Positions 4,508 to 44,474 of a stretch of 64,000 bases of DNA are shown in pieces (position 1 is the first letter of the stretch; every line of letters begins with the position of its first letter). Under the pieces are notes generated by a model that was not told the origin of the DNA, made no database searches, and saw only the letters and a program-made list of their open reading frames with translations. The stretch spans positions 124,001-188,000 of the IMG/VR virus record IMGVR_UViG_3300018962_000001. The stretch is one strand, 5' to 3'. A program made the translations under genes and the position numbers.

Positions 4508-4585
4508 GGGATGGTAGTTCAGCCTGGTTAGAACACTGGCCTGTCACGCCAGAGGTCGTGGGTTCAAATCCCATCCATCTCGCCA
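4508..4585 (+). tRNA. trnD: tRNA-Asp (GTC)
   Basis: Acceptor GGGATGG/CCATCTC, anticodon arm CTGGC-CTGTCAC-GCCAG, T loop GTTCAAATC, discriminator G, encoded CCA. Confidence 0.97.
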
Positions 4586-4704
4586 CCCCAATTGCTGCCG
4601 GTCTGAGGGAGCCTTCGGGCGACATACCTCTGGATTGGGACCTACGGAGGCCTCCTGCCGTGGGCAGACAAGTGGAGGCAATACCTTAGTCGTGCGGAGG
4701 ATGT

Positions 4705-4887
4705 GTGAAAATTCTTGAGCGCGGTACACCGCCGTCCGAGCCGAGCTATGAGGTTCGCTGCAAGGCCTGTGGGAGTCTCATTTGCTTTCAAGAATCCGAG
4801 GCCAAAAAGACGGAGACTCAGTTCTATGGGACATCGATTGAGATCGCGTGTCCGGTGTGCCAGCAGACGATCACCATAACTCTGTAG
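4705..4887 (+). CDS. Small Zn-ribbon protein
   Basis: GGAGG RBS, GTG start; CKAC...CPVC. Confidence 0.75.
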   Translation: MKILERGTPPSEPSYEVRCKACGSLICFQESEAKKTETQFYGTSIEIACPVCQQTITITL

Positions 4888-4910
4888 AGGGAGGTCCGTG
4901 TCGGCACTAC

Positions 4911-4987
4911 GTCCATGTAGCTTAGTTGGATAGAGCATCAGTTTGCGGAACTGAAGGCCGGGGGTTCGACTCCCTCCGTGGACGCCA
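4911..4987 (+). tRNA. trnR: tRNA-Arg (GCG)
   Basis: Acceptor GTCCATG/CGTGGAC, anticodon arm TCAGT-TTGCGGA-ACTGA, GTTCGACTC, CCA. Confidence 0.95.
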
Positions 4988-4990
4988 TGA

Positions 4991-5065
4991 TCGGTCGCAG
5001 CTCGACGGTCGAGCAACACCCTGATACGGTGCAGGCTGCTGGTTCGAATCCAGCCGACCGAACCA
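4991..5065 (+). tRNA. trnI: tRNA-Ile (GAT), atypical
   Basis: Acceptor TCGGTCG/CGACCGA, anticodon arm CACC-CTGATAC-GGTG, GTTCGAATC, ACCA; C at position 8. Confidence 0.88.
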
Positions 5066-25754: not shown

Positions 25755-28700
25755 TTAAATATATCCAGCGGCACGCAGATCGCGCAAAAAGCCTGCCCAG
25801 GCTTCTTCTTGCCGGGCATCAATCATCCGGGCAATTTGATCAAGGGTATAATTGACGCCCTCAATCTGGTAGGTCGGAGCATAGGTGATGGGCGGCAGGT
25901 TCAGCCGGGTCGCCACGGCAGCCAGCGCGGGCGCTGCTGTTTGTGCCCGGAATCGGTCAAAGGTCGCAGCGCCGCCACCAAGCGAACGGTCGAGCAATCC
26001 ATGCTCCAGCTCCTGTGTCAATGCGACTAATTGATCCTCCATCGCCGCCCGCAATCGCGCGAGTCGTTCGCGTAACCGATCGACGGGAACGACGACCTCC
26101 GGCCCAGCCTCGCCCAATAAGTAATTGGTACCAGTATGCGCCCCGATCCCGGTCACCGGCTCCCGAATGACGCCACCTGTGGCATACCCAACCCAGCCAC
26201 CACCACGCATCACCGACTGGACCCCAGGCAGATCACGAATATGGCCGTACCGGCGTTTAATATAATTAATCGCGGCGATCAGGTTTTCAATGGGATCATA
26301 GATGTCTCCGGGATTGCCAAGATCCCGTCCGTTCGCATAGCCCAGATCTCCGGTATAGGCACGGGCGGATGCCCGTTTGTTGGCATTAAAGGTTTGCGGA
26401 ATCGTTTGAGCCAGGCCGCGCGATGGATACCCCGCGCGAAAATTCGAGTCCCATAGATTGATAGATCGGGGATTCCAGCCTGACTCATACTTGCCAAGAA
26501 TGGACAGCCCCTGAAGCCAATCGCGGGTAACCGCAGCCCCTGCCAGTGCCTCGCTGATCCACGATCGCGCTGGCCCCGGTGTGCCCGGCCAGTACTCGCC
26601 ACCCCGTGGGTCCGGCGTGTCTTGAGTCACGCCCCGCAGTTCGCGGAGGAAGGCCGCGAGTTCCAGCTTGGGATCAACCCAATTGCCCCGTTTGTCACTA
26701 ATCTGATAGTGGAGGTGATCGACCATTTCCCCGTCGCGGTAGGGCGTATGCCCGACGTTGCCGATGTCATAGCCCCGCTCGATCTGCTGGCCCGCGCGGA
26801 AGTTGGCTGGATCAACGAGGTGGGCATAGTAGTGTTCGCGACCCGATTGCCCGCGAATTTGAATATAGTTTCCACCGAATCCGTTCCAGCCCTGATAGGA
26901 AACGACGCCGCTCTCCAGTGCTCGGATGATCGTCCCTTCATCGGCGAGAATGTCGATGCCCTCGTGTCTCCCGGTGGTATCAGGACGCGCATCCCCCCAC
27001 CACGATACGATCTCCCGGCTGCCGACCATAAACTCGGCAGCGTCATAGACATCGGTCCCGACCTGGGCATCCTCAAAGGCACGCAGTAAGCCTTCGACCA
27101 GCGCGAGTGCCCACTCTTTCACTTTGCCGAAGATCGCCGTGCCCACACCAGCAAAGGCATCACCAGCAAAGTCGAACGACTCGAATCCCACGGCGCTCAG
27201 CCCACGATCCAGCACCCACCCCGCACCTTGACTGATCCAGTTAATGACATCGCCGATCGCGTCGCCAATGCCAAGTTCATAGGCCGGGTAGTTCCCCGGT
27301 AGCAACCCACGCCGCCGCAGGCGCGCGGTCTCCTGATGCGGGAGGACCGTTGAGCCGCGCGGCAACATAACGATTTCCGGTCCCTTTTCTCCCACAATGG
27401 CCGGGCCACCTGGATGGTACCCCCGCCGCGTGCCCCGCGCATATTGGGGAATGGTCGGAAGATTAAAGGTATCGGGAAGCGGCGCGGCAGCACCGAGCTT
27501 CTCGGCAATCCAATTGATCGCGTCGCGGAATTTGTTGACAAAGAACTCAAACCCTTTAATGGCAGCATTAAGTCCCGACGATCCATCCGCCGGGCCGATG
27601 GCCGTGTTTGCCATCTTTTTCATAATGGTGCCGATCTCGTTAGCAGCTCCCACGAACGGGGCGAGAATGGCCTCCTTGATCTCGCTGATTCGGTCGCTCA
27701 TCCCTTTCCAGGCGCGATAGCCTCCATTGAGCACGCCATTGCCCCGGTCATCCCAGGTGCCGACAAAATCACGCATCGCGGTTTTGCCACCCTCGACGAG
27801 ATTCGCAAAGAGTCCCAGCACGCCAGGGCCACCAACGGTGTACGTTCCCACCAAATTGTTCCGAATAAGATTCGGAAGATTAACGACCAGTTGTGCCACC
27901 TGGCCGATTAAGGAGTCGCCGCTGGTATCACTCAGCCCAATCCACTGCTTCACGGTGCGACTGGTATCGTTGATTAACCCCCAGAATAGCCCAAGGACGC
28001 CGCCGCCGCCGGACGCATAGCGCCCGACCAACTCGCCGATGAGTCGGAAGAATCCATTCGCGAGGCGTTGGATCGTGCCTAACATCGATCCGGCAGCAGA
28101 ATCCGATCCGACCCAGGCAATCAGCGCATCGAGGCCTTCATTGACAAGCCAATACAGCCAGCCCAGTACCCCGTTCTGCCCGGACGCATACGTGCCAACC
28201 ATCCATCTGATCGCAGCGAGATAGTCATCCGCAAGCGTGCGGATCAGACCGAGCATCCCCCCCTGTTGGTAGGCTCCGATCCATCGCTCAATATTTGTTA
28301 GCGCGGTATCCACCAGCGTTGCCAGGAGTCCAAGCAGACCGCCGCCGCCGGGAGTCCACGTGCCGACCATCCAACGGATGGTCTGAAGCATGGCATCCGC
28401 GAGACCCTGGATTTTCGCAAGCCCCCAGTCCCATAAGTTCTGGAACCACCGCACGATCCCGTTGACCATATCGGGAATAATCGAGTGCCCAACCAGATCC
28501 ACCCACAGCTGGTAAAAGGCGTTTTTCACCCCTTCCCACAAGCCAACTGCCAGGCCGATCACCGTGGTCACTGCCCCGGTGAAGATCGATACTACACTGT
28601 CAATAATCCCCTGGACAAAATCGCCAACCGCTTGCCAAAGCGGCTGCCAATCGCCGGTATAGAATCCGTAGATGATTCCCGCAACAATCCGCACCACCCC

Positions 28701-31700
28701 GGTGATCACCGTCGCGATTAGTTGAATCACGCCAAGGAAGACCTCAATGATTCCGCCAAGCCCGACGATCACGCCCGGCAGCACCCCGGACAGCAGATTG
28801 ATGATGAATCCCAGGACATAGAGAAACGTCGTTCCCAGAATCGTGCCCACCGTCACCAATACCGCAGCGATACCTCCTAAGATGGGCATGAGCGACCGCA
28901 GGGTATTGAAAAAGATGGTGACCAGAGGACTCAGCACCTGGAACGCGGTTTGGAGATTCGCCCAGAGGCGTCCGAACGCTAACCCAACCGCTCCCACGGC
29001 ACGTTGAAAATCATGAAAGAGCGGTTGCAGGAAGGCGATGAATCGACTCCAGGTCGGCGTGACCGTGGTGTTCCAGTACTGAACAAACTCGGCGACGCGC
29101 CCCTGAATATTGCCCCAGTTCTTCAGCCACGCCACCGTTAACAGCCCGATCACCAGCGCGATCGCGCCAATCGCGAGGGTGACGGGGTTGATCGCGACCG
29201 CTAAGGCTGAGAAGATGGCTGGCCCGGTGCGGAATAGCCCCAGGAGGTTGCTGACAGGATTGGTCAGCATGGTGAGCGGGTTCAATGCCCGCCAGATTGC
29301 GCTGAACACCGGTCCCAGCCGTGATCCCACGGCTGCCAGGACCGGGAAGCGCGTGCCGAGGGCCGTAAATAGGCCCGTAACCGTGTTGACAGGGTGGATT
29401 AACAGTTGGAATGGATTCAGGATTCCGCGCAGCGCAGGGGCTAGGGGACCAAGGTAGGTTGTCACCCCTTGGATTCCAAGATGAATCGCACCGCCAACGC
29501 GGAAGACGGCAAAGGCCGTCCCAATCCCCGCGACGACACTGAGAATCGTCCCGCCATTGGTTTGCAAGAAGGCAAAGAAGGGCTGGATTTCGGCCCGCAC
29601 CCCTTGCATCGTCGCCCGCAGATTGGCAAACTCATCGGGGAGTTGACCGAGTCCGCCGAACTCGGATTCCCAATCCACCCGTGCTTCGCCCCCCGCAGGC
29701 ATCGGAGGCAGCGGGATGTCGGGAGCCGTCATGCCAAAGAGGGCAGTGACAAATTGGACAACCGCATTGCGGGCTAAGTCGATTCGCTCCTTAGCCGTAT
29801 CAATCGTGGTGCTGAATGATTGCCATGCTTGTTGGCCTTGGGCCAGGCCAGTCGTGATATTGTCGGTGAGCTGCGTGATCGCCTGGGTCGCGTCACCAAA
29901 GGTCGATTGTTGTCCACGAGCCGCTTGATCGGCTGCTTTTTGCGCCTTTTCCTGAATGTTCAGGATCATCTGCTCAATTTCTGAGTACTCTTGTGATCCC
30001 TCGGCATAGCGACTGCGAAGGCCCATCAACAGCTCAAGGGCTTCGTTATATCGTCCTTGATCCGTCAGGAGGCGCGCTTGGGCCTTGATCTGCCGCTCAT
30101 AGGCGTTTTCTGCCTTGATCCCCGAACTTGCGATCGAACGATCCCGCTGGGCTTGCAGACGCTCAATCTGCGCCTCGATGTTGAGCCACTCTTTCGATCC
30201 CTCGGCAAAGTGCGACTGTCGCTCCCGCAGCTTCGCAATCGCTCCATCATAATCGCCGGTTGCCTTTTCCAGATTGGCTTGCGCGGCGATCTGTTGATCC
30301 ATCGCCTTCGCAGCCTTGCCGGTTGCCTCCTCCTGCAACCGTGCCCGGCGTTCTTCGAGCACCTGGATCTGGCGCAGCGTGTCAAAGTACTCCTTGCTCC
30401 CCGGCTCCAAGCCCGCCAACTTTTCGCGCAAGATGGCGATCTGCCCGTTGGTGTCCTCCAGTTCCAGGTTGTATTTTTCCTGGGCGGTTCCCACCTTGGC
30501 AGCATCGCGGGCGGCGTCCTCCGCTTGCTGGCGTTGGAGATTGGCGATCTGCTCCATGATGCGGTAGCGCTCTGCCGGATCAGTGGTTCGTTCAAGCTCC
30601 TCGTTAAGCAACGCGATTTTGCCGGGCGTATCCGCAATGGCGAGCTGGTAGTCGAGGAGGGCTTTTCGCTGCCGTTCCTGTTCTTCCGTCGCTTCACGCC
30701 GGGCTTGATTGAGTTCTCGCTCCGCTTCCAGATATTCCAGTGTGCCGGGGGTCAATTCACTTAAGCGTTGCTCTAGGATCGCGGTCTTTTCCGCCGCCGT
30801 CGCCGTTTCGAGGGCATTGCGGCGCTGCGCCTCGGCCAAGGCTTCCGCTTCTTTGCGCGACTTTTCTTCAGCCGCCGCCTGAAGCTGCGCCAACTGGGTC
30901 CGCAGCCGGTATCCTTCTTCAGACTCTTCGCCAACCGCCGCGATCCGGTCGCGCAACATTTGCTGGCGTGTTGCATCATCGGCAATCGCGTATTGATAAT
31001 CCCACTGTGCGTCCGCTAAGCGCTTGAGCCGATCTTCTTCCTTTTTGGTCCCACTTTCGCGTTCATCGGCCAGGCGATGCTCCAGGTCATAGATCTGCGC
31101 GAGAATCTTGTAGTATTCTTCACTTCCATGCTCAACATTCGCAAGTTCACCGCGCAGGATCGCCAGTTTCCCGGCAGTATCGGCAATATGGAAGTTGTAG
31201 TCGCGCTGGGCTTTCGCGCGGCGGTTGGCTTCCAAGACCGCCTCGCGTTCCCCCGGCGTCATGCCCGGCAGCAGCCCAAGTTTGCGATCTTCATTGATCT
31301 GGCGTTGAATTTGCAGCACCTGCTCCATGAAGCGGAGTTCCCGCTCTTGGAGGCGGTCGGCGGCGGCAAATCCGGCCAAACGGTCGGCGACCACCTGCTG
31401 CTGCTGTTTCAAAATCTCAAGCTGCTGCTGGAGTTGGGTCTTTTGATCGTCTTGGGCCTGTTCCTGGGCCTCCAACATCGCCAGCTGATCGCGCGCGGCA
31501 CGTTGTTGCGTAAAGGTGCGTGCGTTGCGCAGGGCACGTTCTGCCGAGCGTGTTGCTTCTTGGAGACGGCGGCGGGCGGCGGGATCATCCAAGGCCCGCA
31601 GCTTCGCTTGCACCTCATCGATCTGTTGGGTAAGAACGGCCTGATTCAACCGCTCTTGAATACGTAGGAAGATGTCGCGGTTTTGTTCGCCGAGGCGCGA

Positions 31701-33398
31701 CTCGATCTGCATCAATGATTCGGCACTGATCCTCCCCGTTTGATTGATGGAGTCGATCGCCTGCGCGACCAGTTGCGTGATCCCCGGATCTCCATTGGTG
31801 CCCACGGAGATGCGAATCGCTTCCTCAGCACTAATTTTGCCCGCCGTAACCAGCGCCGTCAGCCGATCTTGAACCTCCTCGGCGATCGTCGTCAGTGCGC
31901 CAAAGTCCGAATCGTCCCACTCAAGATAGGCCCGGAGGACCGGACTAAACCACGTGTCAATGGTCGAGAGCGGCCCTTCTCGCGGCGGCGAGAAACCACG
32001 CAAGAACGCTTCGATCCGGCTAGTGATTGCCAGGATTGCCATCTCGACGTAGCTACTGGCTCCTGCTAACATGCCATCGGCGAAGGCTGCAATGCTGTTC
32101 ACACCGCCAAGGAACAGTTCACGCGACAGGTTCTGAATCAGGCGAAGAATGAGTCCACTTAATCCCAGCAGGAGATTCGTAATCTGGGTGGCAGCCGTGC
32201 CGAAATCGCCGCTAAACAGGGAGATCAAGGCTCCCCGGAGCGGCGCGAGCGCGGCCAGCACCTGCGCTGCAAACTGGCCGTATCCTCCCACGACCCGATC
32301 CACAAAGGCCAGCGCTGGGGCGGTTGCCTGGCTGAATCCGGTTGCCATTGCCTGAACCGTGCTGATAGCGAGGCGCATGCCTGCGGCAATGCCCTGCCCC
32401 AGCGTGGCGGCGGCGGCGAATAACGCCGGGTCTTTCAGTAAATTTTCGAGGCCAACCAACTGCTCTTTGATGACATCAAAGATTGGTGCTCCGAACACGC
32501 TGCGCAGCATGAACCAGCGGTCAGAAATATTCGACAGAATACCGTCCATCGATCGGGCGGCAAGTTGGGCGGCACCGCCGAACTTCTCGGCAAGAATCTC
32601 GTTGAGGGCGGTGAGCGCCTGATCCGCCGTGCCGAGATACGTTCCCTGCGCATCGAACTTGAGTCCCTTCATCTCAAGATCGGAGCGAGTCGCAATCGCA
32701 AGCTCTCGGAGGCGGCGGAAGGCATCGCCGAAGTCACCCGTTCCAACACGAGCAATCGCGAAGGTGACTTGTTCCAATTGGCTGCTTAAATCACGGATCG
32801 CCGGACGAGTGACGACCGCTGCGTTGGCGACGTTGAGGAGAAATTCTTGCGTGCGCGCGCCAGCAACCTGGAGTTGCCGATCCGCTTCCACCAGCGCGGG
32901 CAGATCAAACGGGGTTTGCACATTAATCGCCTGCAATTCGGCAAGGCGACTTCGGGCGCGCGCGAGCATCTGCGCTGTCGTATCGCCTTCCTGTCGCAGC
33001 AGGGTCATGTAGGAGATGATGCTGTTTTCGAGTTGCTGGTTGGGACCAACCAGCCCGGAGAGTGCTGCCGAGGCAATCCGGCCTAACTCACGGAATCCAA
33101 AGGTCAACGCGCCCACGCGCGTGATCAGGCCGACCATCCCCCCGCCTAAGACGTTGATCGACGATGACAATCCTGACGAGGTTTGCTGGGCACGGACGAA
33201 CGTGTCGCGAAGCACGGAAGCCAGGGTTCGGGCTGACGCGGTAAGTGAACTCATGGATCGCGTGCTCGTCTGCGTGTTGACGTTAAACCCCTGGAGCTGT
33301 GATCCAAGCGCTTGAAGATTTGACCCGATGGCGCGGAGGGCGTTCAGCGCCGACTGGGCATTGCCCGTAAAATTTAAGAGAACCTGAATTTGATTCAC
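25755..33398 (-). CDS. Tape measure protein with C-terminal M23 peptidase and lytic transglycosylase domains
   Basis: GGAGG RBS + GTG 33398; TPFDLPAL..A..QL and GILSNISD TMP motifs; long amphipathic repeats; HEGID/YAHL/HLH (M23); ESGWNP..IN.WDSN, GLAQ, DPIENL.AA..YI..RYG (SLT). Confidence 0.95.
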   Translation of the reverse strand: MNQIQVLLNFTGNAQSALNALRAIGSNLQALGSQLQGFNVNTQTSTRSMSSLTASARTLASVLRDTFVRAQQTSSGLSSSINVLGGGMVGLITRVGALTFGFRELGRIASAALSGLVGPNQQLENSIISYMTLLRQEGDTTAQMLARARSRLAELQAINVQTPFDLPALVEADRQLQVAGARTQEFLLNVANAAVVTRPAIRDLSSQLEQVTFAIARVGTGDFGDAFRRLRELAIATRSDLEMKGLKFDAQGTYLGTADQALTALNEILAEKFGGAAQLAARSMDGILSNISDRWFMLRSVFGAPIFDVIKEQLVGLENLLKDPALFAAAATLGQGIAAGMRLAISTVQAMATGFSQATAPALAFVDRVVGGYGQFAAQVLAALAPLRGALISLFSGDFGTAATQITNLLLGLSGLILRLIQNLSRELFLGGVNSIAAFADGMLAGASSYVEMAILAITSRIEAFLRGFSPPREGPLSTIDTWFSPVLRAYLEWDDSDFGALTTIAEEVQDRLTALVTAGKISAEEAIRISVGTNGDPGITQLVAQAIDSINQTGRISAESLMQIESRLGEQNRDIFLRIQERLNQAVLTQQIDEVQAKLRALDDPAARRRLQEATRSAERALRNARTFTQQRAARDQLAMLEAQEQAQDDQKTQLQQQLEILKQQQQVVADRLAGFAAADRLQERELRFMEQVLQIQRQINEDRKLGLLPGMTPGEREAVLEANRRAKAQRDYNFHIADTAGKLAILRGELANVEHGSEEYYKILAQIYDLEHRLADERESGTKKEEDRLKRLADAQWDYQYAIADDATRQQMLRDRIAAVGEESEEGYRLRTQLAQLQAAAEEKSRKEAEALAEAQRRNALETATAAEKTAILEQRLSELTPGTLEYLEAERELNQARREATEEQERQRKALLDYQLAIADTPGKIALLNEELERTTDPAERYRIMEQIANLQRQQAEDAARDAAKVGTAQEKYNLELEDTNGQIAILREKLAGLEPGSKEYFDTLRQIQVLEERRARLQEEATGKAAKAMDQQIAAQANLEKATGDYDGAIAKLRERQSHFAEGSKEWLNIEAQIERLQAQRDRSIASSGIKAENAYERQIKAQARLLTDQGRYNEALELLMGLRSRYAEGSQEYSEIEQMILNIQEKAQKAADQAARGQQSTFGDATQAITQLTDNITTGLAQGQQAWQSFSTTIDTAKERIDLARNAVVQFVTALFGMTAPDIPLPPMPAGGEARVDWESEFGGLGQLPDEFANLRATMQGVRAEIQPFFAFLQTNGGTILSVVAGIGTAFAVFRVGGAIHLGIQGVTTYLGPLAPALRGILNPFQLLIHPVNTVTGLFTALGTRFPVLAAVGSRLGPVFSAIWRALNPLTMLTNPVSNLLGLFRTGPAIFSALAVAINPVTLAIGAIALVIGLLTVAWLKNWGNIQGRVAEFVQYWNTTVTPTWSRFIAFLQPLFHDFQRAVGAVGLAFGRLWANLQTAFQVLSPLVTIFFNTLRSLMPILGGIAAVLVTVGTILGTTFLYVLGFIINLLSGVLPGVIVGLGGIIEVFLGVIQLIATVITGVVRIVAGIIYGFYTGDWQPLWQAVGDFVQGIIDSVVSIFTGAVTTVIGLAVGLWEGVKNAFYQLWVDLVGHSIIPDMVNGIVRWFQNLWDWGLAKIQGLADAMLQTIRWMVGTWTPGGGGLLGLLATLVDTALTNIERWIGAYQQGGMLGLIRTLADDYLAAIRWMVGTYASGQNGVLGWLYWLVNEGLDALIAWVGSDSAAGSMLGTIQRLANGFFRLIGELVGRYASGGGGVLGLFWGLINDTSRTVKQWIGLSDTSGDSLIGQVAQLVVNLPNLIRNNLVGTYTVGGPGVLGLFANLVEGGKTAMRDFVGTWDDRGNGVLNGGYRAWKGMSDRISEIKEAILAPFVGAANEIGTIMKKMANTAIGPADGSSGLNAAIKGFEFFVNKFRDAINWIAEKLGAAAPLPDTFNLPTIPQYARGTRRGYHPGGPAIVGEKGPEIVMLPRGSTVLPHQETARLRRRGLLPGNYPAYELGIGDAIGDVINWISQGAGWVLDRGLSAVGFESFDFAGDAFAGVGTAIFGKVKEWALALVEGLLRAFEDAQVGTDVYDAAEFMVGSREIVSWWGDARPDTTGRHEGIDILADEGTIIRALESGVVSYQGWNGFGGNYIQIRGQSGREHYYAHLVDPANFRAGQQIERGYDIGNVGHTPYRDGEMVDHLHYQISDKRGNWVDPKLELAAFLRELRGVTQDTPDPRGGEYWPGTPGPARSWISEALAGAAVTRDWLQGLSILGKYESGWNPRSINLWDSNFRAGYPSRGLAQTIPQTFNANKRASARAYTGDLGYANGRDLGNPGDIYDPIENLIAAINYIKRRYGHIRDLPGVQSVMRGGGWVGYATGGVIREPVTGIGAHTGTNYLLGEAGPEVVVPVDRLRERLARLRAAMEDQLVALTQELEHGLLDRSLGGGAATFDRFRAQTAAPALAAVATRLNLPPITYAPTYQIEGVNYTLDQIARMIDARQEEAWAGFLRDLRAAGYI

Positions 33399-33410
33399 GG
33401 TTGTCCCTCC

Positions 33411-33439
33411 TTGCCGAAGGGACGAACGTGATCTACAGT
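33411..33439 (+). promoter_or_regulatory. Sigma70-type promoter for orphan pentamer RNA
   Basis: TTGCCG-17-TACAGT, 11 nt upstream of the GGNNN tract. Confidence 0.55.
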
Positions 33440-33450
33440 GCGGTGAACGC

Positions 33451-33530
33451 GGCCTGGATCGGCCTGAGACGGCATCGACGGGCAAGGCACGGTTGGGCTA
33501 TCCGTGGCTAGGTATGGTTGGGCGTGGCGC
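33451..33530 (+). ncRNA. Orphan (GGY-NN)16 pentamer-tract RNA, candidate guide
   Basis: 16 in-register pentamers, 13 starting GG; flanked by promoter and terminator. Confidence 0.65.
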
Positions 33531-33559
33531 AGCACCTCACATGTGTGAGGTGCTGTTTG
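33530..33559 (+). terminator. Rho-independent terminator
   Basis: CAGCACCTCAC-ATGT-GTGAGGTGCTG-TTT. Confidence 0.75.
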
Positions 33560-33688
33560 ATTCTTGGGATGCCAACGGTGCCCCATCCGAGCCTCGCACG
33601 ATACGGATCATGTGTCGGATGGGCGAGCACGGGGGAATGGTGGCCCATATAGGAGAAGTCGGGGCAGATGCGCGGACTTCTGCCCCGT

Positions 33689-33717
33689 AGTATAGCAAAG
33701 ACCAGCGGCGTCGTCTA
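33689..33717 (-). promoter_or_regulatory. Promoter re-starting transcription towards tape measure gene
   Basis: TAGACG-17-TATACT with extended -10 TG; followed by hairpin CGGGGCAGA...TCTGCCCCG. Confidence 0.65.
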
Positions 33718-33906
33718 GGATGGGTCGGTGGGGGACTCCCACGGGAAGGGAATCCCATTGGCGAGAAAATACTTCCGCCAAAACTCGGTGTCGAAGGGAT
33801 GGCGATCCGGCGGCGGCGGCGTGAGATGGCGCGTCTTAATGGCTGCCGCGATTGCCACCAGCGAACGGTAGATCACGGCCCAGAACAAGCGATCGGCGTT
33901 CTTCAT
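33715..33906 (-). CDS. Small hypothetical protein
   Basis: AAGGAGG RBS before ATG 33906 (MKNADRLFW...). Confidence 0.65.
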   Translation of the reverse strand: MKNADRLFWAVIYRSLVAIAAAIKTRHLTPPPPDRHPFDTEFWRKYFLANGIPFPWESPTDPS

Positions 33907-33916
33907 TGTTCCTCCT

Positions 33917-34924
33917 TTAAGGAGCAGTGCGCTCCGCTGCTTCGATGGTGTGAATCCCGGTGAGAAGTTGATAATACGCCAAGCTTCCAGGCTGAAATAA
34001 GAGCAGATAGCCTTGGAGCAACTCTTTCCGCGTGGCACGCGCGGGTTCTAAGGTGATGCGTGCTCGAATCAGCGCCATCCGTTCGTCATCCGTCAACTGC
34101 GGATCGGCCAGCCGATCTTCAAGCAGCAGGATCTTCTGGACGCGCGCAGCGGCAGCGAGGGCCATTGTGGTCGGCGAGATGATCGAGTCGGAGTCGTCCT
34201 CCGGTGGCGTATAAGGCCGGGGGGCAGCTAATCGGGTGGTTGGCCCCGTCGCCGGACGCAGACGTTGATAAATCTCGACCCACGACAGGCCCAACCGCCG
34301 GAGTGCGAGGATTTCCGCACGCCGGTTCGGCAGATTCTGATAGGCCACCGACTGACGCAGATCCTCCCAGAGCGGCTGAATCTCGCTGAACCACTGCTGA
34401 CGGCGGAGAACATCCTGTGGCCCCGGATCAAGCACTCGCACCTCCTCCGGCCAGAAAGCAATCGCCTGATCGATCTGGAGATTAATGAGTCCCAGTGGCA
34501 CGCCCGCAGCATCGCACTCAACACCATCTTGATCGATCCACGGCTTGTGCGGTGATCGCCGGATGAGATGGGGTTTCGTTCCCTGGATGACCGGGAAGAT
34601 CGCCGGATCGAGTGGGGGGACAAAGGCCGCATGCGACGTGGGATCATCCACGCGGGCCAGATCTGGGATCGTGTGCCCACACCCGGAACAAAACTTCGCA
34701 CCGGGTTCGATTCCACGATACCCACAGCGGGTACACTGATTTGCTGCGCGCGCGCGCTGTAGGCACTGATTTGCGAGCAATGTCCGGGACCGAAACTCTG
34801 CCAGATCAGATCGATAGAGCAGGGTGGTCCGGTAGGCTGCATACAAGGTCGCCATCAGGACTCCTACCTGAACTCCCTCACTCGAAAGATGGAATAGGAG
34901 ATCCACGAACCAATCATTCATCAC
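33917..34924 (-). CDS. Membrane-anchored Zn-ribbon protein
   Basis: N-terminal hydrophobic helix; CTRCG...GAKFCSGCG; coupled to upstream HTH gene. Confidence 0.7.
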   Translation of the reverse strand: MMNDWFVDLLFHLSSEGVQVGVLMATLYAAYRTTLLYRSDLAEFRSRTLLANQCLQRARAANQCTRCGYRGIEPGAKFCSGCGHTIPDLARVDDPTSHAAFVPPLDPAIFPVIQGTKPHLIRRSPHKPWIDQDGVECDAAGVPLGLINLQIDQAIAFWPEEVRVLDPGPQDVLRRQQWFSEIQPLWEDLRQSVAYQNLPNRRAEILALRRLGLSWVEIYQRLRPATGPTTRLAAPRPYTPPEDDSDSIISPTTMALAAAARVQKILLLEDRLADPQLTDDERMALIRARITLEPARATRKELLQGYLLLFQPGSLAYYQLLTGIHTIEAAERTAP

Positions 34925-35136
34925 TCCTCCCGTTCCTCCGGCGGCGGCGGCGCGAACAATGCCAGCAACGGCACACCGAGCGCGGCAGCCATTTTGTCAA
35001 GCGATCCGATCGTTAACGTCTCGACGTGGCGATTATGCCAGGCTTTGCGAACCGTCCCCACCCCCAGATCGGCCCGTCGTGCCAGCTTCGAGATATTTAA
35101 CGCCTGGGCGGTGGCGATAACAGCTACTTGAAACAT
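34921..35136 (-). CDS. Cro/C1-type (XRE) HTH regulator
   Basis: LNISKLARRADLGVGTVRKAW...TIGSLDKMAAALGV; AAGGAGG RBS. Confidence 0.85.
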   Translation of the reverse strand: MFQVAVIATAQALNISKLARRADLGVGTVRKAWHNRHVETLTIGSLDKMAAALGVPLLALFAPPPPEEREE

Positions 35137-35176
35137 TCGATCCTCCTTCCTCGTGTGGAGCGCGCATCATTGTGCA

Positions 35177-35260
35177 TTGACAGACCGCATATCTATGTTA
35201 TACTGTCATTATAATGTATAGTATATAGAGTATAGCATACAAAACCTATGCTACATTATA
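35177..35260. promoter_or_regulatory. AT-rich divergent promoter/operator region between HTH gene and pentamer array
   Basis: TTGACA-16-TATACT (35177-35204); near-palindrome TATACTGTCATTATAATGTATAGTATA; inverted repeat TAGCATA-N7-TATGCTA (35233-35253). Confidence 0.7.
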
Positions 35261-35309
35261 CTCCCACTCCCGGCAGAATGCTAGACATTCGACAGATGAA
35301 TTCGGACAT

Positions 35310-35710
35310 GGTTGGGTGTGGATTGGCTAGGCTAGGAGAGGCACGGTGAGGTCTGGCACGGATGACTCTGCACTGAGTCCAATCCCTTCGGGGTATCTGG
35401 GTATGGCATGGGAACGGTTGGGTCCGGTAAGGATCGGCTGGGAGCGGCAAGGTGTGGCAAGGTCGGGCTGGGCCGGGCAACGCAGGGCACGGATGGCGGT
35501 GTATTCCGCCACCATTCCCCACCAGGGGAATACGAGGATGGCTGGGCGCGGGCATGGCGAGGCGTGGCAAGTCGAGGCTGGGCCGCGCTAGGTGCGGCAA
35601 GGCACGGATGATCGTGGATTCGATCACCATCCCTCACACGAGGGTTATTTGGCTCGGATCGGTCAGGATTGGCTAGGTCAGGTGGGGCTGGGTGAGGCTT
35701 GGTTTGGTAC
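35310..35710 (+). repeat. Array 1: four (GGY-NN)n pentamer units, the first three each closed by two hairpins (candidate guide RNA array)
   Basis: Tracts of 10, 16-18, 11-13 and 12 pentamers at 35310, 35400, 35540, 35651; conserved GGCAC-GGATG-stem-TGNAYT-stem end. Confidence 0.9.
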
Positions 35711-35720
35711 AAGGAGCAGT

Positions 35721-36359
35721 ATGATGGCATCCAACATGATTCAAGCGACGGTTGAGATCCAGGGAACGAAGCCACTGTTGTGGCACGCCTTTACGCCCGA
35801 CAGCATTCCGGCGGACGGCAAGAAGGAAAAGACCGGGGTGGCGGGTAACGATCCCCAGGAATGGCGGCGATCCTTCCTGGCGGATCACGAAGGCCGCTTG
35901 TTTGTGAACCCGGAATACATCTTCGGCTGCCTGCGCGATGGCGCGCGACACACCAAAAAAGGCCGTGGATCGATTATGTCGAATGTGGCGGCAACGCTTC
36001 AGATCGTGGACGAGCGGATCTACACCGATCGCTATTTCCCACGCAACGGCGCGACTGGCCCCTTTGATCCGGCATCGGCGGATCGCCCGCCGATCGAGAT
36101 CACCGAGCCGGTTTATCTCGACGTGCGATCGGTGAAGAACCCGTCCACGAAAGGTCGGAACGTCCGCTACCGGGTGGCGGCGAGTCCAGGGTGGCGGGCG
36201 AGCTTTACGATTCTGTGGGACAAAACCATTGTCAGCCGCACCGAGATGGAGGCGGTCATTACTGATGCGGGCCGACTCGTCGGGCTGGGTGATGGCCGAT
36301 CGATCGGCTTTGGTCGATTCATGGTGGTGCCAGGGTCCATCACGTTTACCGAGGTCTAG
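35721..36359 (+). CDS. Stand-alone RAMP / Cas7-like RNA-binding protein (Vipr-like)
   Basis: AAGGAG RBS; VEIQGTKPLL (beta1), LFVNPEYIFGCLRDGA (alpha1), C-terminal Gly-rich loop GLGDGRSIGFGRF, all RAMP hallmarks; no other cas genes. Confidence 0.85.
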   Translation: MMASNMIQATVEIQGTKPLLWHAFTPDSIPADGKKEKTGVAGNDPQEWRRSFLADHEGRLFVNPEYIFGCLRDGARHTKKGRGSIMSNVAATLQIVDERIYTDRYFPRNGATGPFDPASADRPPIEITEPVYLDVRSVKNPSTKGRNVRYRVAASPGWRASFTILWDKTIVSRTEMEAVITDAGRLVGLGDGRSIGFGRFMVVPGSITFTEV

Positions 36360-36369
36360 AGTCTTTCGA

Positions 36370-36427
36370 GGCGAGGCATGGTGAGGTGAGGTATGGGGTG
36401 GTTGGCGAGGTACGGCCTGGCAAGGAG
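36370..36427 (+). repeat. Pentamer tract (unit 5) forming the leader of the HNH gene
   Basis: GGCGA GGCAT GGTGA GGTGA GGTAT GGGGT GGTT GGCGA GGTAC GGCCT GGCAA GGAG. Confidence 0.85.
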
Positions 36428-36434
36428 TTTGAAC

Positions 36435-36752
36435 ATGGGCATGAAACGACAACCTCCGAAGATCTGGGAAGGAACCCGCAAACGAATATTCGAACGCGAT
36501 CGGGGGATCTGCCAATCTCCCCTGGCTCCACCCCTGTGTCAAGGGAAACGCGGCGAGTTAACGCTTGCCACGGCGCATATCGACCACCGGCGAAGCGGTC
36601 GGTTTGGCACGAATGCGGATAGCAACCTCCGGGTGCTCTGCCGCGCGTGCCACGTCCTCCGCGACGATCCGCGCCACCGAGGCATGATCGGCGGAGCCTT
36701 GCGCGACGGGATCATCCCTCCCCATTGGCGGGAGCTAACCTGGGGAGAGTAG
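36435..36752 (+). CDS. HNH endonuclease
   Basis: RKRIFERDRGICQ...C...AHIDH......GTN.DSNLRVLCRACH. Confidence 0.9.
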   Translation: MGMKRQPPKIWEGTRKRIFERDRGICQSPLAPPLCQGKRGELTLATAHIDHRRSGRFGTNADSNLRVLCRACHVLRDDPRHRGMIGGALRDGIIPPHWRELTWGE

Positions 36753-36974
36753 ATGGGTCGTCCAAGGCACAGAACGGGTGCCGTGCGCCAGCTGCCGTGG
36801 CGCAGAGTCGTCACGGCAGCACGTGATGGCGGAATCATGGGGGCGGTGCTGGGAGGGGTGTTCTTTGGCCCTTCTGGCGCGCTGGTGACCAGCTTAGTAG
36901 GAGCGGTGGCAGCGGCGGCGGTTCGCTGGTATCGAAGCGTCAAGGCGAGAGGTCGCATGGGAAGGCATGGATGA
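36753..36974 (+). CDS. Small glycine-zipper membrane protein
   Basis: GGAG RBS, starts at HNH stop; GGIMGAVLGGVFFGPSGALVTSLVGAVAAAAV followed by basic residues. Confidence 0.6.
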   Translation: MGRPRHRTGAVRQLPWRRVVTAARDGGIMGAVLGGVFFGPSGALVTSLVGAVAAAAVRWYRSVKARGRMGRHG

Positions 36975-37325
36975 TCGTGGATCGATCCCACTTCTCGGTT
37001 GGGCAAGCGAGGGTCTGGCAAGGACAGGCAAGGCTTGGCTCGGCAGGGTCGGGTTCGGCTGGGCAAGGATACTGGTGTTTCCAGTACCATCGATTGGGTG
37101 TGGCGGGGCGGTGGTAGGGTGGGGCTTGGCTTGGTCCGGCACGGCAGGGATGATGGTGTCTCCATTCCACCTCATGGTCGGGCGAGGAGGGGCGAGGCAG
37201 GGCTAGGCGGGGCAAGGTGAGGCCCGGCAAGGTTCGGCACCGATCCTCGTGTCATCGAGGCCACCACGGGGTATGCCGAGGCGTGGTAAGGTGAGGCTAG
37301 GCTGCGGTGAGGTCCGGCGAGACGG
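36943..37325 (+). repeat. Array 2: one degenerate plus four (GGY-NN)n units with single hairpins
   Basis: Tracts at 36997 (14), 37097 (10), 37176 (13), 37270 (about 11); hairpins TACTGG-TGTTT-CCAGTA, ATGG-TGTCT-CCAT, CCTCG-TGTCAT-CGAGG. Confidence 0.9.
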
Positions 37326-37327
37326 GG

Positions 37328-37358
37328 AACAGGACGGGTGCTGGTCACCCGTCCTGTT
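37328..37358. terminator. Strong hairpin between convergent array and tail chaperone gene
   Basis: AACAGGACGGGTG-CTGGT-CACCCGTCCTGTT, 13-bp perfect stem. Confidence 0.7.
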
Positions 37359-37830
37359 GATTCTCCGGTGCCTGGTCGGCGAACTCATCAACCTTGTTGG
37401 CACGTTTGTAGGCTTGCCAGAAGGCTGACTGCATCGGCGGCGGCGGCGGCGGGGCGAATGGATCTTGATAGACCTTCTCAAACGGCGGCAGCGCCTGCGG
37501 TTTCTTGCCACCGAACGCGGGTCCAAGGACGCGGGCCAGGGCGGTTTCGAGGGCCATAATCTGACTCATTTGCTGGTCCCAGCGATTCCGCGCGACCTGC
37601 TGGTACTCGCGATGGAGTCGCCGCCACCGCCAGCCCAGCACCTCCTCCAGGGGCAAATGCCGGGTTGCCACGATCTCGGTCACCATGTCGTCGATCAGGG
37701 TGCCAATGGCTCCTATGATGTCGAAGGCGAGTTGACCACCGTTGCGCCAGCTGGTGGTGGAGTCTTGGCCGGTTGTTGATTGCGCTTGCCCCACAGCTCC
37801 ACCGCTTGCCGGGCGAGCGTGAAGTTTCCC
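37345..37830 (-). CDS. Tail assembly chaperone, -1 frameshift extension (gpGT-like T part)
   Basis: Open in the -1 frame from slippery site 37830; LPLEEVLGWRWRRL resembles gpT-type motif. Confidence 0.8.
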   Translation of the reverse strand, partial: GKLHARPASGGAVGQAQSTTGQDSTTSWRNGGQLAFDIIGAIGTLIDDMVTEIVATRHLPLEEVLGWRWRRLHREYQQVARNRWDQQMSQIMALETALARVLGPAFGGKKPQALPPFEKVYQDPFAPPPPPPMQSAFWQAYKRANKVDEFADQAPENQQDG

Positions 37831-43566: not shown

Positions 43567-44370
43567 CTACAGGGAATACATGCCTGTCTGGTGCAGGCGT
43601 GCGCGCTGTTCATCGGTCGCTTGCTGCGAGGCCGATGGCTGCGCACTCCCATCTGGTTTCGGGGGGCGCGGATTACCGGGCGGGATTGGGGTCATGAGTC
43701 GCTGGGCAAGCGATCGTGCTTGTTTCGCCCACTGGACCCGCTGCTCCAGGGCAGCCGCTCCGGGGTCGAGCACTTTCACTTCAGTCGGCCATTCACCCGT
43801 TTCCGTGTCGATTAATTCATTGACCATCGCGGCATACCGCTCGGCCTGGGCACGCGCCGTGGCGAGTTCGCCCTGCGCTTGCTCCTGCTGCACGGTCAGC
43901 TGGGTCGTCAGTTGCGTGGTCTGGGCTTCCAACTCGGTGACTCGGCGTTTGTGATCACCGATCTCGCGTTCGCGTTTATCGGCGAGCTTTTGCCACTGTC
44001 GTTGTTTTTCAGCTTCCTCCTCCTCGGCTTTGCGCGCGGCCTCCGCGGCCTCCGCTGCTGCCGTCGCCGCCGCCGCCGCCGCTTCCTCCTGGGCCACCCG
44101 TTCCTGGGTTTCGCGGTCCAGAATTTGTTGCCGCAAGCGCGCCGCTTCCGCCTCCGCATCCTGCTTGGCCTTGTTCACTTCGTCAAACCGGGCCTTGGGG
44201 ATCATATGGTCCGCCGGGGCAGGCGTTGGTGCGGGGCTGGGCGTTGGTGCAGGATCGGTCCCCGTAGGCGCAGGATCACCGTCACCCGGCGCAGGATCAG
44301 TCGTGAATGACCGGGTAAGGAGGAATAACGACCACAGCGCCAATTGTGGGAGCATGAATGTGCCAAACAT
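43567..44370 (-). CDS. Capsid scaffolding protein
   Basis: DPAP repeats, IPKARFDEVN, QWQKLA coiled coil; GGAG RBS before ATG 44370. Confidence 0.85.
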   Translation of the reverse strand: MFGTFMLPQLALWSLFLLTRSFTTDPAPGDGDPAPTGTDPAPTPSPAPTPAPADHMIPKARFDEVNKAKQDAEAEAARLRQQILDRETQERVAQEEAAAAAATAAAEAAEAARKAEEEEAEKQRQWQKLADKREREIGDHKRRVTELEAQTTQLTTQLTVQQEQAQGELATARAQAERYAAMVNELIDTETGEWPTEVKVLDPGAAALEQRVQWAKQARSLAQRLMTPIPPGNPRPPKPDGSAQPSASQQATDEQRARLHQTGMYSL

Positions 44371-44474
44371 ACAGGAATCTCCGGTACGATCCGTTTCGAG
44401 TTTTTCGTGCAACGCCACGGGATCAATACTGCTAGGATGGGGGGATTGAGCAGCTGCTTCAGCGGGGGAGGTTA

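What the first reader, a model, noticed from the sequence alone, without database searches (positions are those of the whole stretch)
35355..37265. Covarying 3' hairpin defines individual guide-like RNA units
Seen: six tracts and the degenerate unit end with the same architecture, GGCA(C/A/G/T)-GGAT..-stem-TG-started 5-6 nt loop-stem-CC. The stems differ in sequence but keep pairing: GACTC/GAGTC (loop TGCACT), TGGCGG/CCGCCA (TGTATT), TGATCG/CGATCA (TGGATT), GATCG/CGATC (TGGAT), TACTGG/CCAGTA (TGTTT), ATGG/CCAT (TGTCT), CCTCG/CGAGG (TGTCAT). In array 1 a second hairpin follows (CCC-TTCG-GGG, ATTCCCC-ACCA-GGGGAAT, CCCTC..GAGGG). Compensatory change across copies is strong evidence for a functional RNA structure. 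Inference: it is a processing site, a filament cap or a nucleation signal that yields ~80-135 nt units, analogous to the crRNA 3' handle but conserved in structure only.
Basis: partly seen in the sequence, partly recalled or inferred. Interest (0 to 1): 0.8.

Follow-up and report, generated by a model that had tools for sequence, protein, structure and literature searches.

The report
Phage VIPR guide-RNA tail hairpins

Summary
The junction motif GGCA-N-(G/C)GAT-N5-TG occurs exactly 7 times in 64 kb, all on the + strand at the stated places (0.62 expected). Each is followed by a 5-bp stem. All 35 stem cells pair and all 5 pairs show compensatory changes.

The hairpins sit at the 3' end of GGY-NN pentamer tracts that flank a 212-aa RAMP protein. 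This protein is homologous over its full length to the solved SUSP1 Vipr protein (profile E 4e-10). An HNH gene follows, as in 73 of 79 related loci. The locus is therefore a VIPR system, and the hairpins are vrRNA 3' tails. In SUSP1 the published tail is a pseudoknot that caps the Vipr filament.

Here the tail is a simpler mini-hairpin: GGAU, a 5-6 bp stem, a UGNNNU loop, then (A/G)CCA. A covariance model found eight more copies in three other metagenomic VIPR loci (15 tails: 74/75 cells paired). A related array has hammerhead ribozymes in the same position, and others end in terminator hairpins.

No RNA data exist for this phage, so capping and processing are inferred.

Verdict: a new member of a known kind, with a tail class I did not find in the three VIPR preprints.

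The parts
35177..35204 (+). Near-consensus sigma-70-type promoter (TTGACA, 16 nt, TG-n-TATACT) that probably drives the whole vrRNA/vipr operon.
   Evidence: 11 of 12 hexamer matches plus an extended -10. Function is inferred.
35310..35393 (+). vrRNA 1: ten GGY-NN units (35310-35359), tail GGAU (35360-35363), stem-loop GACTC/TGCACT/GAGTC (35364-35379), then second hairpin CCC-TTCG-GGG (35384-35393).
35411..35531 (+). vrRNA 2: about 16 units (35411-35490, preceded by a phase-shifted stub at 35390-35414), tail GGAU (35491-35494), stem-loop (35495-35510), ACCA (35511-35514), then second hairpin ATTCCCC-ACCA-GGGGAAT (35514-35531).
35536..35644 (+). vrRNA 3: about 12-14 units (to 35605), tail GGAU (35606-35609), stem-loop (35610-35625), ACCA (35626-35629), then second hairpin CCCTC-ACAC-GAGGG (35631-35644) followed by TTATTT.
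35651..35716 (+). Tail-less GGY-NN tract of 12 units that runs straight into the Shine-Dalgarno sequence AAGGAG (35711-35716) of vipr.
35721..36359 (+). vipr: 212-aa single-RRM RAMP protein with a G-rich loop (GLGDGRSIGFGRF).
   Evidence: Sequence hit to PDB 36pp_D 'SUSP1 Vipr protein', E 8e-6. Profile hit E 4e-10 over positions 8-194 of 199. AF2 model pLDDT 82, with best folds Csm3/Cas7 at E about 3e-7. Matches phrog_4652. More than 2000 homologues.
36370..36427 (+). Tail-less GGY-NN tract (7 + 4 units with a phase shift) that ends in the Shine-Dalgarno sequence AAGGAG (36422-36427) of the HNH gene.
   Evidence: The same layout occurs in many relatives.
36435..36752 (+). HNH endonuclease gene, the likely vipr-accessory (vap) gene.
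   Evidence: Pfam HNH at the gathering score. PHROG HNH families at E 1e-8. A homologue lies downstream on the same strand in 73 of 79 related loci.
36753..36974 (+). 73-aa glycine-zipper/transmembrane-like ORF. Not conserved in related loci. Its stop codon lies inside the next tail (GGATGA).
   Evidence: 0 homologues in the loci.
36944..36990 (+). Stub unit ('degenerate unit'): 3-5 GG units inside the ORF end, GGCAT-GGAT (36964-36972), stem-loop (36973-36987), CCA (36988-36990).
   Evidence: The same arrangement is seen in L363 at 3123-3153, right after its HNH gene.
36997..37089 (+). vrRNA 5: 14 units, tail GGAU (37067-37070), stem-loop (37071-37085), ACCA (37086-37089).
37097..37169 (+). 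vrRNA 6: about 10 units with a phase shift, tail GGAU (37148-37151), stem-loop with a G-U pair (37152-37166), CCA (37167-37169).
37176..37263 (+). vrRNA 7: 13 units, tail CGAU (37241-37244), stem-loop (37245-37260), CCA (37261-37263).
37270..37358 (+). Last tract (about 12 units with a phase shift), which ends not in the mini-hairpin but in a 13-bp hairpin (37328-37358) facing the convergent gene.
   Evidence: The terminator scan did not flag it.
33451..33556 (+). Separate solo GGY-NN tract (13 of 16 units) followed by a 12-bp terminator-like hairpin with a T-run (33529-33556).
34921..35136 (-). Divergently transcribed Cro/C1-type HTH protein next to the operon promoter. A possible regulator.
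   Evidence: HTH_26, E 1.6e-5. The regulatory role is inferred.

Best explanation
The seven hairpins are the 3' tails of the vrRNAs (guide RNAs) of a phage-encoded VIPR system. SHOWN: a + strand operon holds tracts of GGY-NN pentamers around a vipr gene and an HNH gene. Each internal tract ends with GGCA-N-GGAU, a covarying 5-6 bp stem, a UGNNNU loop and (A/G)CCA. INFERRED from the SUSP1 and P. fulva work: one Vipr protomer binds each GGY-NN unit and the protomers polymerise into a helical filament that presents the NN dinucleotides for gapped pairing with DNA. The hairpin stands at the 3' end of that filament as its cap and as the mark that makes the RNA a Vipr substrate. My own inference: the switch from GGY to GGA at the junction stops the filament, because the pocket of the next protomer that holds the third base excludes purines. 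The short G-poor linker after CCA is left naked and is cut or trimmed by cellular RNases back to the hairpin. This would release units of about 81-131 nt from the long transcript. The module works as punctuation: it also stands after the last ORF, before the first tract of array 2. In a relative, hammerhead ribozymes occupy the same position.
For: Motif enrichment and cross-validated covariance model. Covariation in the window: 35/35 cells paired, 5/5 compensatory pairs, 0/500 shuffles. Covariation in 15 tails from 4 genomes: 74/75 cells paired, 0/500 shuffles. RNAalifold returns the same helix plus a sixth U:R pair. G-U/U-G pairs and the exclusive + strand orientation fit an RNA element. The hairpin is joined in register, at zero distance, to the upstream tract, whereas its distance to the next tract varies. 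The neighbouring protein is a Vipr homologue, with the key residues H22, D191 and R193 conserved. Literature: vrRNA is repeats plus a structured tail; a pseudoknot caps the filament's 3' end and subunits near it are always resolved; solo vrRNAs were recognised by sequence identity to the SUSP1 tail, and those authors treat the shared tail as conferring competence for Vipr complex formation. The terminal GG unit carries a purine at position 3 in 63/95 tracts of this clade against 9.5% of internal units. All four SUSP1 tracts also end in GGG or GGA, and the Y pocket excludes purines. A related array (L046) has seven Rfam type II hammerheads in the same inter-tract position. In L363 a stub tract plus tail follows the HNH gene, as at 36964-36990 here.
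Against: There is no RNA evidence for this phage: no RNA run was listed and the DNA runs show no variants. Ends, processing and Vipr binding are therefore untested. Four of the seven hairpins fold no better than shuffled sequence. No target of any vrRNA was found, so guide function here rests on homology alone. Three tracts carry no mini-hairpin (before vipr, before HNH, and the last one), so the tail is not obligatory for every tract. Only 4 of about 155 related loci use this tail class. The covariance alignments are fitted to the structure, and their E-values come from a short calibration.
Confidence: 0.82

Rival explanations
1. The hairpin plus (A/G)CCA mimics a tRNA acceptor end. It is primarily a processing signal read by host tRNA-maturation enzymes: RNase P at the 5' side of the helix and/or 3' exonucleases that stop at CCA. 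This would be a natural 'tRNA-punctuated' guide array. Capping of the filament would be secondary or absent.
For: CCA follows the stem within 0-1 nt in 13 of 15 tails from four genomes, preceded by A or G in 10. The module also occurs where there is no guide to cap (36964-36990 here; L363 3123-3153). In L046 ribozymes occupy the same position, so the slot is a cleavage slot there. That bacterial RNase P recognises helix-RCCA, and that RNase T stalls at CC, is from my own knowledge and was not tested here.
Against: ARAGORN and Rfam find nothing tRNA-like in the region, even at permissive thresholds. The helix is only 5-6 bp and the loop is not a T-loop. The A/G before CCA can pair with the U of GGAU, and CC can pair with GG, so the CCA may not be single-stranded. 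Unit 1 lacks the CCA. RNase P cleavage would remove the tail from the guide, unlike SUSP1, where the tail stays on the RNP.
Confidence: 0.15
2. The hairpin is a 5' handle of the tract that follows it, not the 3' tail of the tract before it.
For: The hairpin at 36973-36987 has hardly any tract before it but a full tract after it. The tract before vipr and the last tract each have a hairpin upstream but none downstream.
Against: The hairpin is fused in register to the upstream tract through the invariant GGCA-N-GGAU, while the spacer to the next tract varies from 7 to about 30 nt and may hold another hairpin. The first tract after the promoter has no hairpin before it. In SUSP1, sRNA-seq and cryo-EM place the structured element at the 3' end.
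Confidence: 0.08
3. The hairpins are intrinsic terminators or attenuators that subdivide transcription of the array.
For: They are stem-loops between units. The second hairpin of unit 3 is followed by TTATTT and was flagged as terminator-like.
Against: None of the seven mini-hairpins has a U-run. Their stems are 5-6 bp, and the scan flags none of them. The genes downstream need read-through. The true array ends use different, longer hairpins (33529-33556, 37328-37358).
Confidence: 0.03
4. The hairpins are DNA-level inverted repeats (protein-binding or recombination sites) or chance palindromes in G-rich repeats.
For: Short palindromes are common. 56 TG-loop hairpins with stems of at least 4 bp exist on the + strand of the window.
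Against: Only these seven carry the flanking motif (expected 0.62). The stems differ in sequence but keep pairing, which argues against sequence-specific DNA binding. G-U pairs would be A-C mismatches on the other strand. The same class recurs in three other VIPR loci in the same position.
Confidence: 0.02

Closest known systems
vrRNA 3' tail of type II VIPR systems (Escherichia phage SUSP1; KT454805, 27450-29560, minus strand)
   Same: Both follow a GGY-NN tract directly, with a purine replacing Y in the last GG unit. Both are about 25-40 nt and have covarying stems that differ between vrRNAs of one phage. Two SUSP1 tails even start with GGAU plus a 5-bp stem (GGUAG, GGCAG), as here. The units are about 100 nt and flank a vipr gene.
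   Different: The SUSP1 tail is an H-type pseudoknot whose 16-nt loop pairs back to the last pseudo-repeat. Here the loop is 5-6 nt, so no pseudoknot is possible. The stem is followed by a conserved (A/G)CCA and, in array 1, by a second CCC-loop-GGG hairpin. The Vipr proteins are related only at profile level (E 4e-10; tblastn finds nothing in 50,697 phage records). The accessory gene is an HNH nuclease, whereas the paper describes the accessory genes of type II systems as predicted DNA-binding proteins.
Hammerhead-ribozyme-interspersed vrRNA arrays (reported for type I and V VIPR; example here L046, Marinithermofilum abyssi)
   Same: Same Vipr clade (57% identity) and the same slot between successive tracts. 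By my reading of the L046 sequence (not verified against the Rfam alignment), cleavage would leave a 5-bp mini-hairpin at the vrRNA 3' end. The element also precedes the first tract.
   Different: The window has no ribozyme signature (Rfam at gathering and at E up to 10), so cleavage, if any, must be done in trans.
CRISPR crRNA repeat-derived 3' hairpin handle (Cas6-type processing in class 1 systems)
   Same: A small hairpin at the 3' end of each guide in a multi-guide transcript, next to a Cas7-like RAMP that coats the guide. The Vipr model's best structural matches are Csm3/Cas7.
   Different: There are no identical repeats: six different stems among seven copies. There are no contiguous spacers, because the guide is a 5-nt periodic tract with 2 informative bases per unit. 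There is no Cas6 or other cas gene, no adaptation module, and the system is phage-encoded.
tRNA acceptor-end mini-helices and tRNA punctuation of polycistronic RNAs
   Same: A helix followed by purine-CCA, repeated between functional RNA units.
   Different: There is no tRNA or T-loop features, the helix is only 5-6 bp, and the resemblance is untested.

Membership tests
VIPR system (Vipr + vrRNA) | A Vipr protein: a minimal single-RRM RAMP with a G-loop and thumb, homologous to characterised Vipr. | tested here: met
   PDB 36pp_D SUSP1 Vipr at E 8e-6. Profile E 4e-10, full length. AF2 pLDDT 82 with Cas7/Csm3 as best folds. H22, D191 and R193 align with SUSP1 H17, D175 and R177.
VIPR system (Vipr + vrRNA) | Intergenic tandem GGY/NN (YNNGG) pentamer repeats of at least 4 units flanking vipr, on the coding strand. 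| tested here: met
   At least 11 tracts of 7-16 units, all on the + strand, between 33451 and 37340 and nowhere else in the window. 90.5% of internal units in the clade are GGY.
VIPR system (Vipr + vrRNA) | A structured 3' tail directly after the repeat tract. | tested here: met
   Seven covarying hairpins, and 15 in four genomes.
VIPR system (Vipr + vrRNA) | An adjacent vipr-accessory (vap) gene predicted to act on DNA. | tested here: met
   HNH gene at 36435-36752. It is syntenic in 73/79 loci.
VIPR system (Vipr + vrRNA) | Encoded mainly by phages or proviruses. | tested here: met
   The window is identical to IMG/VR contig UViG_3300018962_000001, 204,685 bp. A tail-protein PHROG lies nearby.
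VIPR system (Vipr + vrRNA) | vrRNAs are expressed as roughly 100-nt species and co-purify with Vipr. | not testable with these tools
   No RNA run was listed. The unit spacing of 81-131 nt is only compatible with this.
VIPR system (Vipr + vrRNA) | NN dinucleotides match natural DNA targets under the 1-nt-skip rule, without self-targets. | tested here: inconclusive
   No self-target in the window. No exact 10-unit match in IMG/VR for four guides. Nothing above shuffled guides in 2.8 Mb of held loci. Only exact-match scans of the collections were possible.
SUSP1-type pseudoknot tail (type II VIPR) | An H-type pseudoknot: the loop of the tail hairpin pairs with the last pseudo-repeat. | tested here: not met
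   Loops are 5-6 nt, and no consistent loop-flank complementarity appears across units (sequence).
Hammerhead-interspersed vrRNA array | A hammerhead ribozyme between tracts. | tested here: not met
   No Rfam hit in 33300-37500 at E up to 10. The relative L046 has seven.
VIPR type assignment (I-VII) | Position in the authors' Vipr phylogeny plus vap gene and array architecture. | not testable with these tools
   The type tables are not held. The text says only that types III-V carry predicted nucleases or helicases and shows an HNH Vap. A nuclease-associated type (III or V) is my inference.
CRISPR array / crRNA handle | Near-identical direct repeats of about 24-40 nt separating unique contiguous spacers, with cas genes. 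| tested here: not met
   TRF finds only 10-20-nt periodicities in the locus. The stems differ between copies. No cas genes other than the RAMP.
Intrinsic terminator | A GC-rich stem followed by a U-run. | tested here: not met
   None of the seven is flagged. The flanks are CCA-YY, not U-runs.
tRNA-like element | A cloverleaf or at least an acceptor/T-arm with a T-loop; detected by ARAGORN or Rfam. | tested here: not met
   Searches find none in the locus. Only the helix-RCCA resemblance remains.

The most novel reading that the evidence does not exclude
The mini-hairpin with its conserved purine-CCA is a tRNA-acceptor-like punctuation mark. It would let the phage borrow the host's tRNA-maturation enzymes (RNase P and/or CCA-limited 3' exonucleases) to cut a guide-RNA array and the operon mRNA into units. 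That would make it a trans-processed counterpart of the hammerhead-punctuated arrays of sister systems, and a natural analogue of engineered tRNA-gRNA arrays.
Probability: 0.15. Interest if true: 0.6.

Novelty: new member of a known kind. Interest (0 to 1): 0.3.

Why it matters
The locus adds an uncultivated 205-kb biocrust phage to the VIPR systems and documents a tail class different from the one solved structurally. This class is a bare 5-6 bp hairpin with fixed flanks (GGAU ... UGNNNU ... RCCA), shared by at least four unrelated metagenomic loci. Within one Vipr-HNH clade the same slot is filled by this hairpin, by other hairpins, by terminators or by hammerhead ribozymes, so the tail appears to be an exchangeable module. 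This gives a small, mutable handle for asking what a vrRNA tail must provide (filament stop, cap, processing site) and for designing minimal vrRNAs. It does not change the current picture of VIPR.

Tried and rejected
(1) RNA evidence: no RNA run holds the locus. Laying the three DNA runs gave identical sequence and no variants, so there is no population-level covariation.

The tail class was found only after fetching more Vipr loci from metagenomes.

(3) Nearest Vipr relatives by exact-protein look-up gave a related but different tail in L321: GGAUA, a 7-bp stem with an 18-nt loop, then CCAC.

(4) Target search by the 1-nt-skip rule found no self-targets, no exact 10-unit matches in IMG/VR for four guides, and nothing above shuffled guides in the held loci.

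(5) Rfam, at both gathering and permissive thresholds, shows no known RNA family in the locus.

(6) tblastn of the protein against 50,697 phage records found no match. The link to SUSP1 needs HMM-level sensitivity.

(7) A pseudoknot like SUSP1's was rejected because the loops are too short and loop-flank complementarity is inconsistent.

(8) The look-alike at 12597-12614 has CM E 0.93 and is chance. The GG-periodic stretch at 44198-44250 lies inside a long minus-strand ORF, 43567-44418.

(9) VIPR type (I-VII) could not be assigned because the classification tables are not available as text.
Full report
OBSERVATION. The region 35290-37340 of the + strand consists of tracts with a strict 5-nt period (GG-Y-N-N), interrupted by short hairpins and by three ORFs. 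The junction motif GGCA-N-(G/C)GAT-N5-TG occurs exactly seven times in the 64-kb window, always on the + strand and always at these sites. Shuffles give 0.62 on average and never 7. A covariance model built from four units (R1) recovered the three units left out at E about 1e-5, and the next best hit in the window had E 0.18. On the model-based alignment of the seven copies, all 35 stem cells form standard pairs and each of the five pairs shows double compensatory changes. No shuffle of 500 reaches this, and sliding the 3' partner by one column drops pairing to 34-52%. Six different stem sequences occur among the seven copies.

Successive tails lie 131, 115, 98, 81 and 94 nt apart. Taken alone, four of the seven hairpins fold no better than shuffled sequence, so the case rests on covariation and position.

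LOCUS ANATOMY. A near-consensus promoter (35177-35204) faces a divergent Cro/C1-type HTH gene. The elements downstream of the promoter, in order:
- three tract+tail units, each followed in this first array by a second small hairpin (CCC-loop-GGG type);
- a tail-less 12-unit tract that ends in the Shine-Dalgarno sequence of a 212-aa ORF (35721-36359);
- a second tail-less tract that ends in the Shine-Dalgarno sequence of an HNH endonuclease gene (36435-36752);
- a non-conserved 73-aa membrane-like ORF;
- a stub tract plus tail that overlaps this ORF's stop codon;
- three more tract+tail units;
- a last tract closed by a 13-bp hairpin.

A further solo tract with a terminator-like hairpin lies at 33451-33556. 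The window is part of a 204,685-bp IMG/VR viral contig from a biocrust metagenome.

IDENTITY. The 212-aa protein has no Pfam family but more than 2000 homologues in metagenomes. It matches the solved 'SUSP1 Vipr protein' (PDB 36pp) at E 8e-6 as a single sequence. As a 36-sequence profile it matches at E 4e-10 over essentially the full length. Its AlphaFold model (pLDDT 82) is most similar to Cas7-family RAMPs such as Csm3 (E about 3e-7, TM about 0.5). The structural library predates the VIPR entries.

Three 2026 preprints describe VIPR (Viral Interference Programmable Repeat) systems. A Vipr RAMP coats vrRNAs made of alternating GGY/NN motifs. The NN dinucleotides read double-stranded DNA with one skipped base per unit. 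Each vrRNA ends in a structured 3' tail that 'parallels crRNAs' (10.64898/2026.04.26.720920). [quoted passage not shown] The third preprint recognised solo vrRNAs by their SUSP1-like tails and treats a shared tail as conferring competence for Vipr complex formation (10.64898/2026.10.15.759431). Every defining feature that can be tested by sequence is met here: a Vipr homologue, GGY-NN tracts, structured tails, an adjacent DNA-acting accessory gene, and a viral context. The HNH gene lies directly downstream of vipr in 73 of 79 related loci.

THE TAIL IN RELATIVES. I fetched about 155 non-redundant loci that encode Vipr proteins 45-67% identical to this one. What follows their tracts is very diverse:
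- terminator hairpins;
- other hairpins, for example a class with the conserved loop GGCGGRAACAAAC in L321 and L053;
- type II hammerhead ribozymes: seven Rfam hits in L046;
- nothing at all, where the tract runs into the HNH start codon.

The window's tail class was absent from the first 75 loci but present in three metagenomic loci. L356 has two copies, one of which shares an identical 24-nt tail with window unit 2. L374 has four copies. L363 has two copies. In the 15 tails from four genomes, 74 of 75 stem cells pair, all five pairs show compensatory changes and no shuffle reaches the observed score. RNAalifold predicts the same helix plus a sixth U:A/U:G pair. CCA follows the stem in 13 of 15 copies. 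The second CCC-loop-GGG hairpin recurs in L356 and L363. A second model built from all 15 found no further copies. On a quick Vipr tree the four loci do not form a tight clade (no support values), which suggests that tails are exchangeable modules. In L363 one tail follows the HNH stop codon with only a stub tract before it, exactly as at 36964-36990 here.

MECHANISM. Shown: the sequence architecture, the covariation, the homology of the protein, and the conserved synteny. Taken from the SUSP1/P. fulva work and inferred for this locus: one protomer per GGY-NN unit, filament formation, gapped DNA recognition, and the tail as the 3' cap and the mark of a Vipr substrate.

My own inference concerns the junction. 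The last GG unit before the tail carries a purine at the third position in 63 of 95 tracts of this clade, against 9.5% of internal units. The same holds in all four SUSP1 vrRNAs. The cryo-EM paper states that the third base is held by the next protomer in a pocket that excludes purines. GGA/GGG at the junction would therefore stop filament growth exactly where the hairpin begins.

The element also appears to act as punctuation. It is fused in register to the upstream tract, is followed by a short G-poor linker, occurs at the start of the second array where there is almost nothing to cap, and is replaced by self-cleaving ribozymes in a sister array. How the RNA is cut here is unknown, since no ribozyme signature exists.

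RIVALS.
(a) A tRNA-acceptor-like helix-RCCA read by RNase P or CCA-limited exonucleases. This is attractive because of the conserved CCA. However, nothing tRNA-like is detected, the helix is very short and the CCA may be paired. I give it about 0.15, and it is partly compatible with the main model.
(b) The hairpin is a 5' handle of the following tract. This is disfavoured by the in-register fusion to the upstream tract, by the first tract having no hairpin before it, and by the SUSP1 precedent.
(c) Terminators. There are no U-runs and none is flagged.
(d) DNA-level repeats or chance. These are excluded by the statistics, the strand bias, the G-U pairs and the recurrence in other loci.

COMPARISON AND NOVELTY. 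The element works like, and is a member of, the vrRNA 3' tails of VIPR systems. It is not a member of the SUSP1 pseudoknot class (5-6 nt loops), nor of the hammerhead-interspersed class, nor of CRISPR repeats. The VIPR type cannot be assigned from the text available. The HNH accessory gene points to one of the nuclease-associated types (III or V by the paper's wording), which the authors describe as enriched in host defence islands, whereas this locus and 35 relatives sit on viral contigs.

What is new is modest: a further phage with a large, two-array VIPR locus, and a simple hairpin-RCCA tail class found in four genomes. I did not find this class in the text or figure legends of the three VIPR preprints; their figures and data tables were not available to me.

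WHAT LED NOWHERE. There is no RNA-seq and no sequence variants in the DNA runs. Motif scans of IMG/VR were saturated by chance hits. No targets were found for the guides. tblastn against phage records found nothing.

Noticed in passing
window 35651-35716 and 36370-36427; also L002, L009, L013, L037, L340, L343, L356, L363, L374 and others: Two GGY-NN tracts have no tail and run straight into the Shine-Dalgarno sequence (AAGGAG, formed by the last units GGCAAGGAG) and start codon of vipr and of the HNH gene. In relatives, a tract ends a median of 5 nt before the HNH ATG in at least 35 of 120 non-redundant loci by a strict count. Vipr coating of these leaders could repress translation of the nuclease (autoregulation), or the leader could itself be a guide. 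I did not find this in the parts of the VIPR preprints that I read.
   Followed up: partly
window tract ends; 95 tracts in L002-L076 and L317-L322; SUSP1 (L078 27450-29560, minus strand): The last GG unit of a tract carries a purine at its third base in 66% of tracts, against 9.5% of internal units. All four SUSP1 vrRNAs also end in GGG or GGA. With the published purine-excluding Y pocket, this looks like a filament stop signal.
   Followed up: partly
window 33451-33556 (+): A solo GGY-NN tract (13 of 16 units) lies 1.8 kb upstream of the main locus, between divergent genes. It ends in a 12-bp terminator-like hairpin with the same GATTCT-type trailer as the hairpin that closes the main array (37328-37365). 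It may be an extra, separately transcribed vrRNA.
   Followed up: partly
window 35390-35414/35411, 36404, 37097-37116/37113, 37305-37306: Several tracts change phase by one nucleotide part-way along. The VIPR paper mentions 'staggered arrays' whose vrRNAs overlap by 1 nt. Whether these shifts mark unit boundaries here is unknown.
   Followed up: no
window 35140-35290 and 34921-35136 (-): An AT-rich region with a near-consensus promoter and several TATAGTATA/TATACT-like repeats lies between the VIPR operon and a divergent Cro/C1-type HTH gene. L321 also has an HTH gene upstream of its vipr. This may be repressor control of the system.
   Followed up: no
L356 2406-2429 versus window 35491-35514: An identical 24-nt tail (GGAU, stem GGCGG, loop UGUAUU, stem, ACCA) occurs in two loci whose Vipr proteins are only 59% identical. 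The tail-bearing loci do not cluster on the Vipr tree, which hints at exchange of tail modules.
   Followed up: partly
L046 3366-4222: Seven Rfam type II hammerhead ribozymes alternate with GGY-NN tracts downstream of a Vipr homologue in Marinithermofilum abyssi. By my reading of the sequence (not checked against the Rfam alignment), cleavage would leave a 5-bp mini-hairpin at each vrRNA 3' end.
   Followed up: partly
L321 3165-3215 and L053 3210-3250: Another tail class: a covarying 7-8 bp stem around a conserved loop GGCGG(A/G)AACAAAC, followed by CCAC or CACC. It is internal to the arrays, and the last unit ends in a terminator.
   Followed up: no
window 25755-33485 (-), 4508-5065 (+): There is a 2576-aa ORF next to the VIPR locus (its real start is probably the GTG near 33402, after a GGAGGG ribosome-binding site) and a cluster of three tRNA genes (Asp, Arg, Ile). 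Both are typical of a large phage genome.
   Followed up: no
window 12597-12614 (+): A single look-alike hairpin (GAT, stem CGGCGG, loop TGGCGA, stem, CCACC) follows a weak GG-periodic stretch. The covariance model gives E 0.93, so it is treated as chance.
   Followed up: yes
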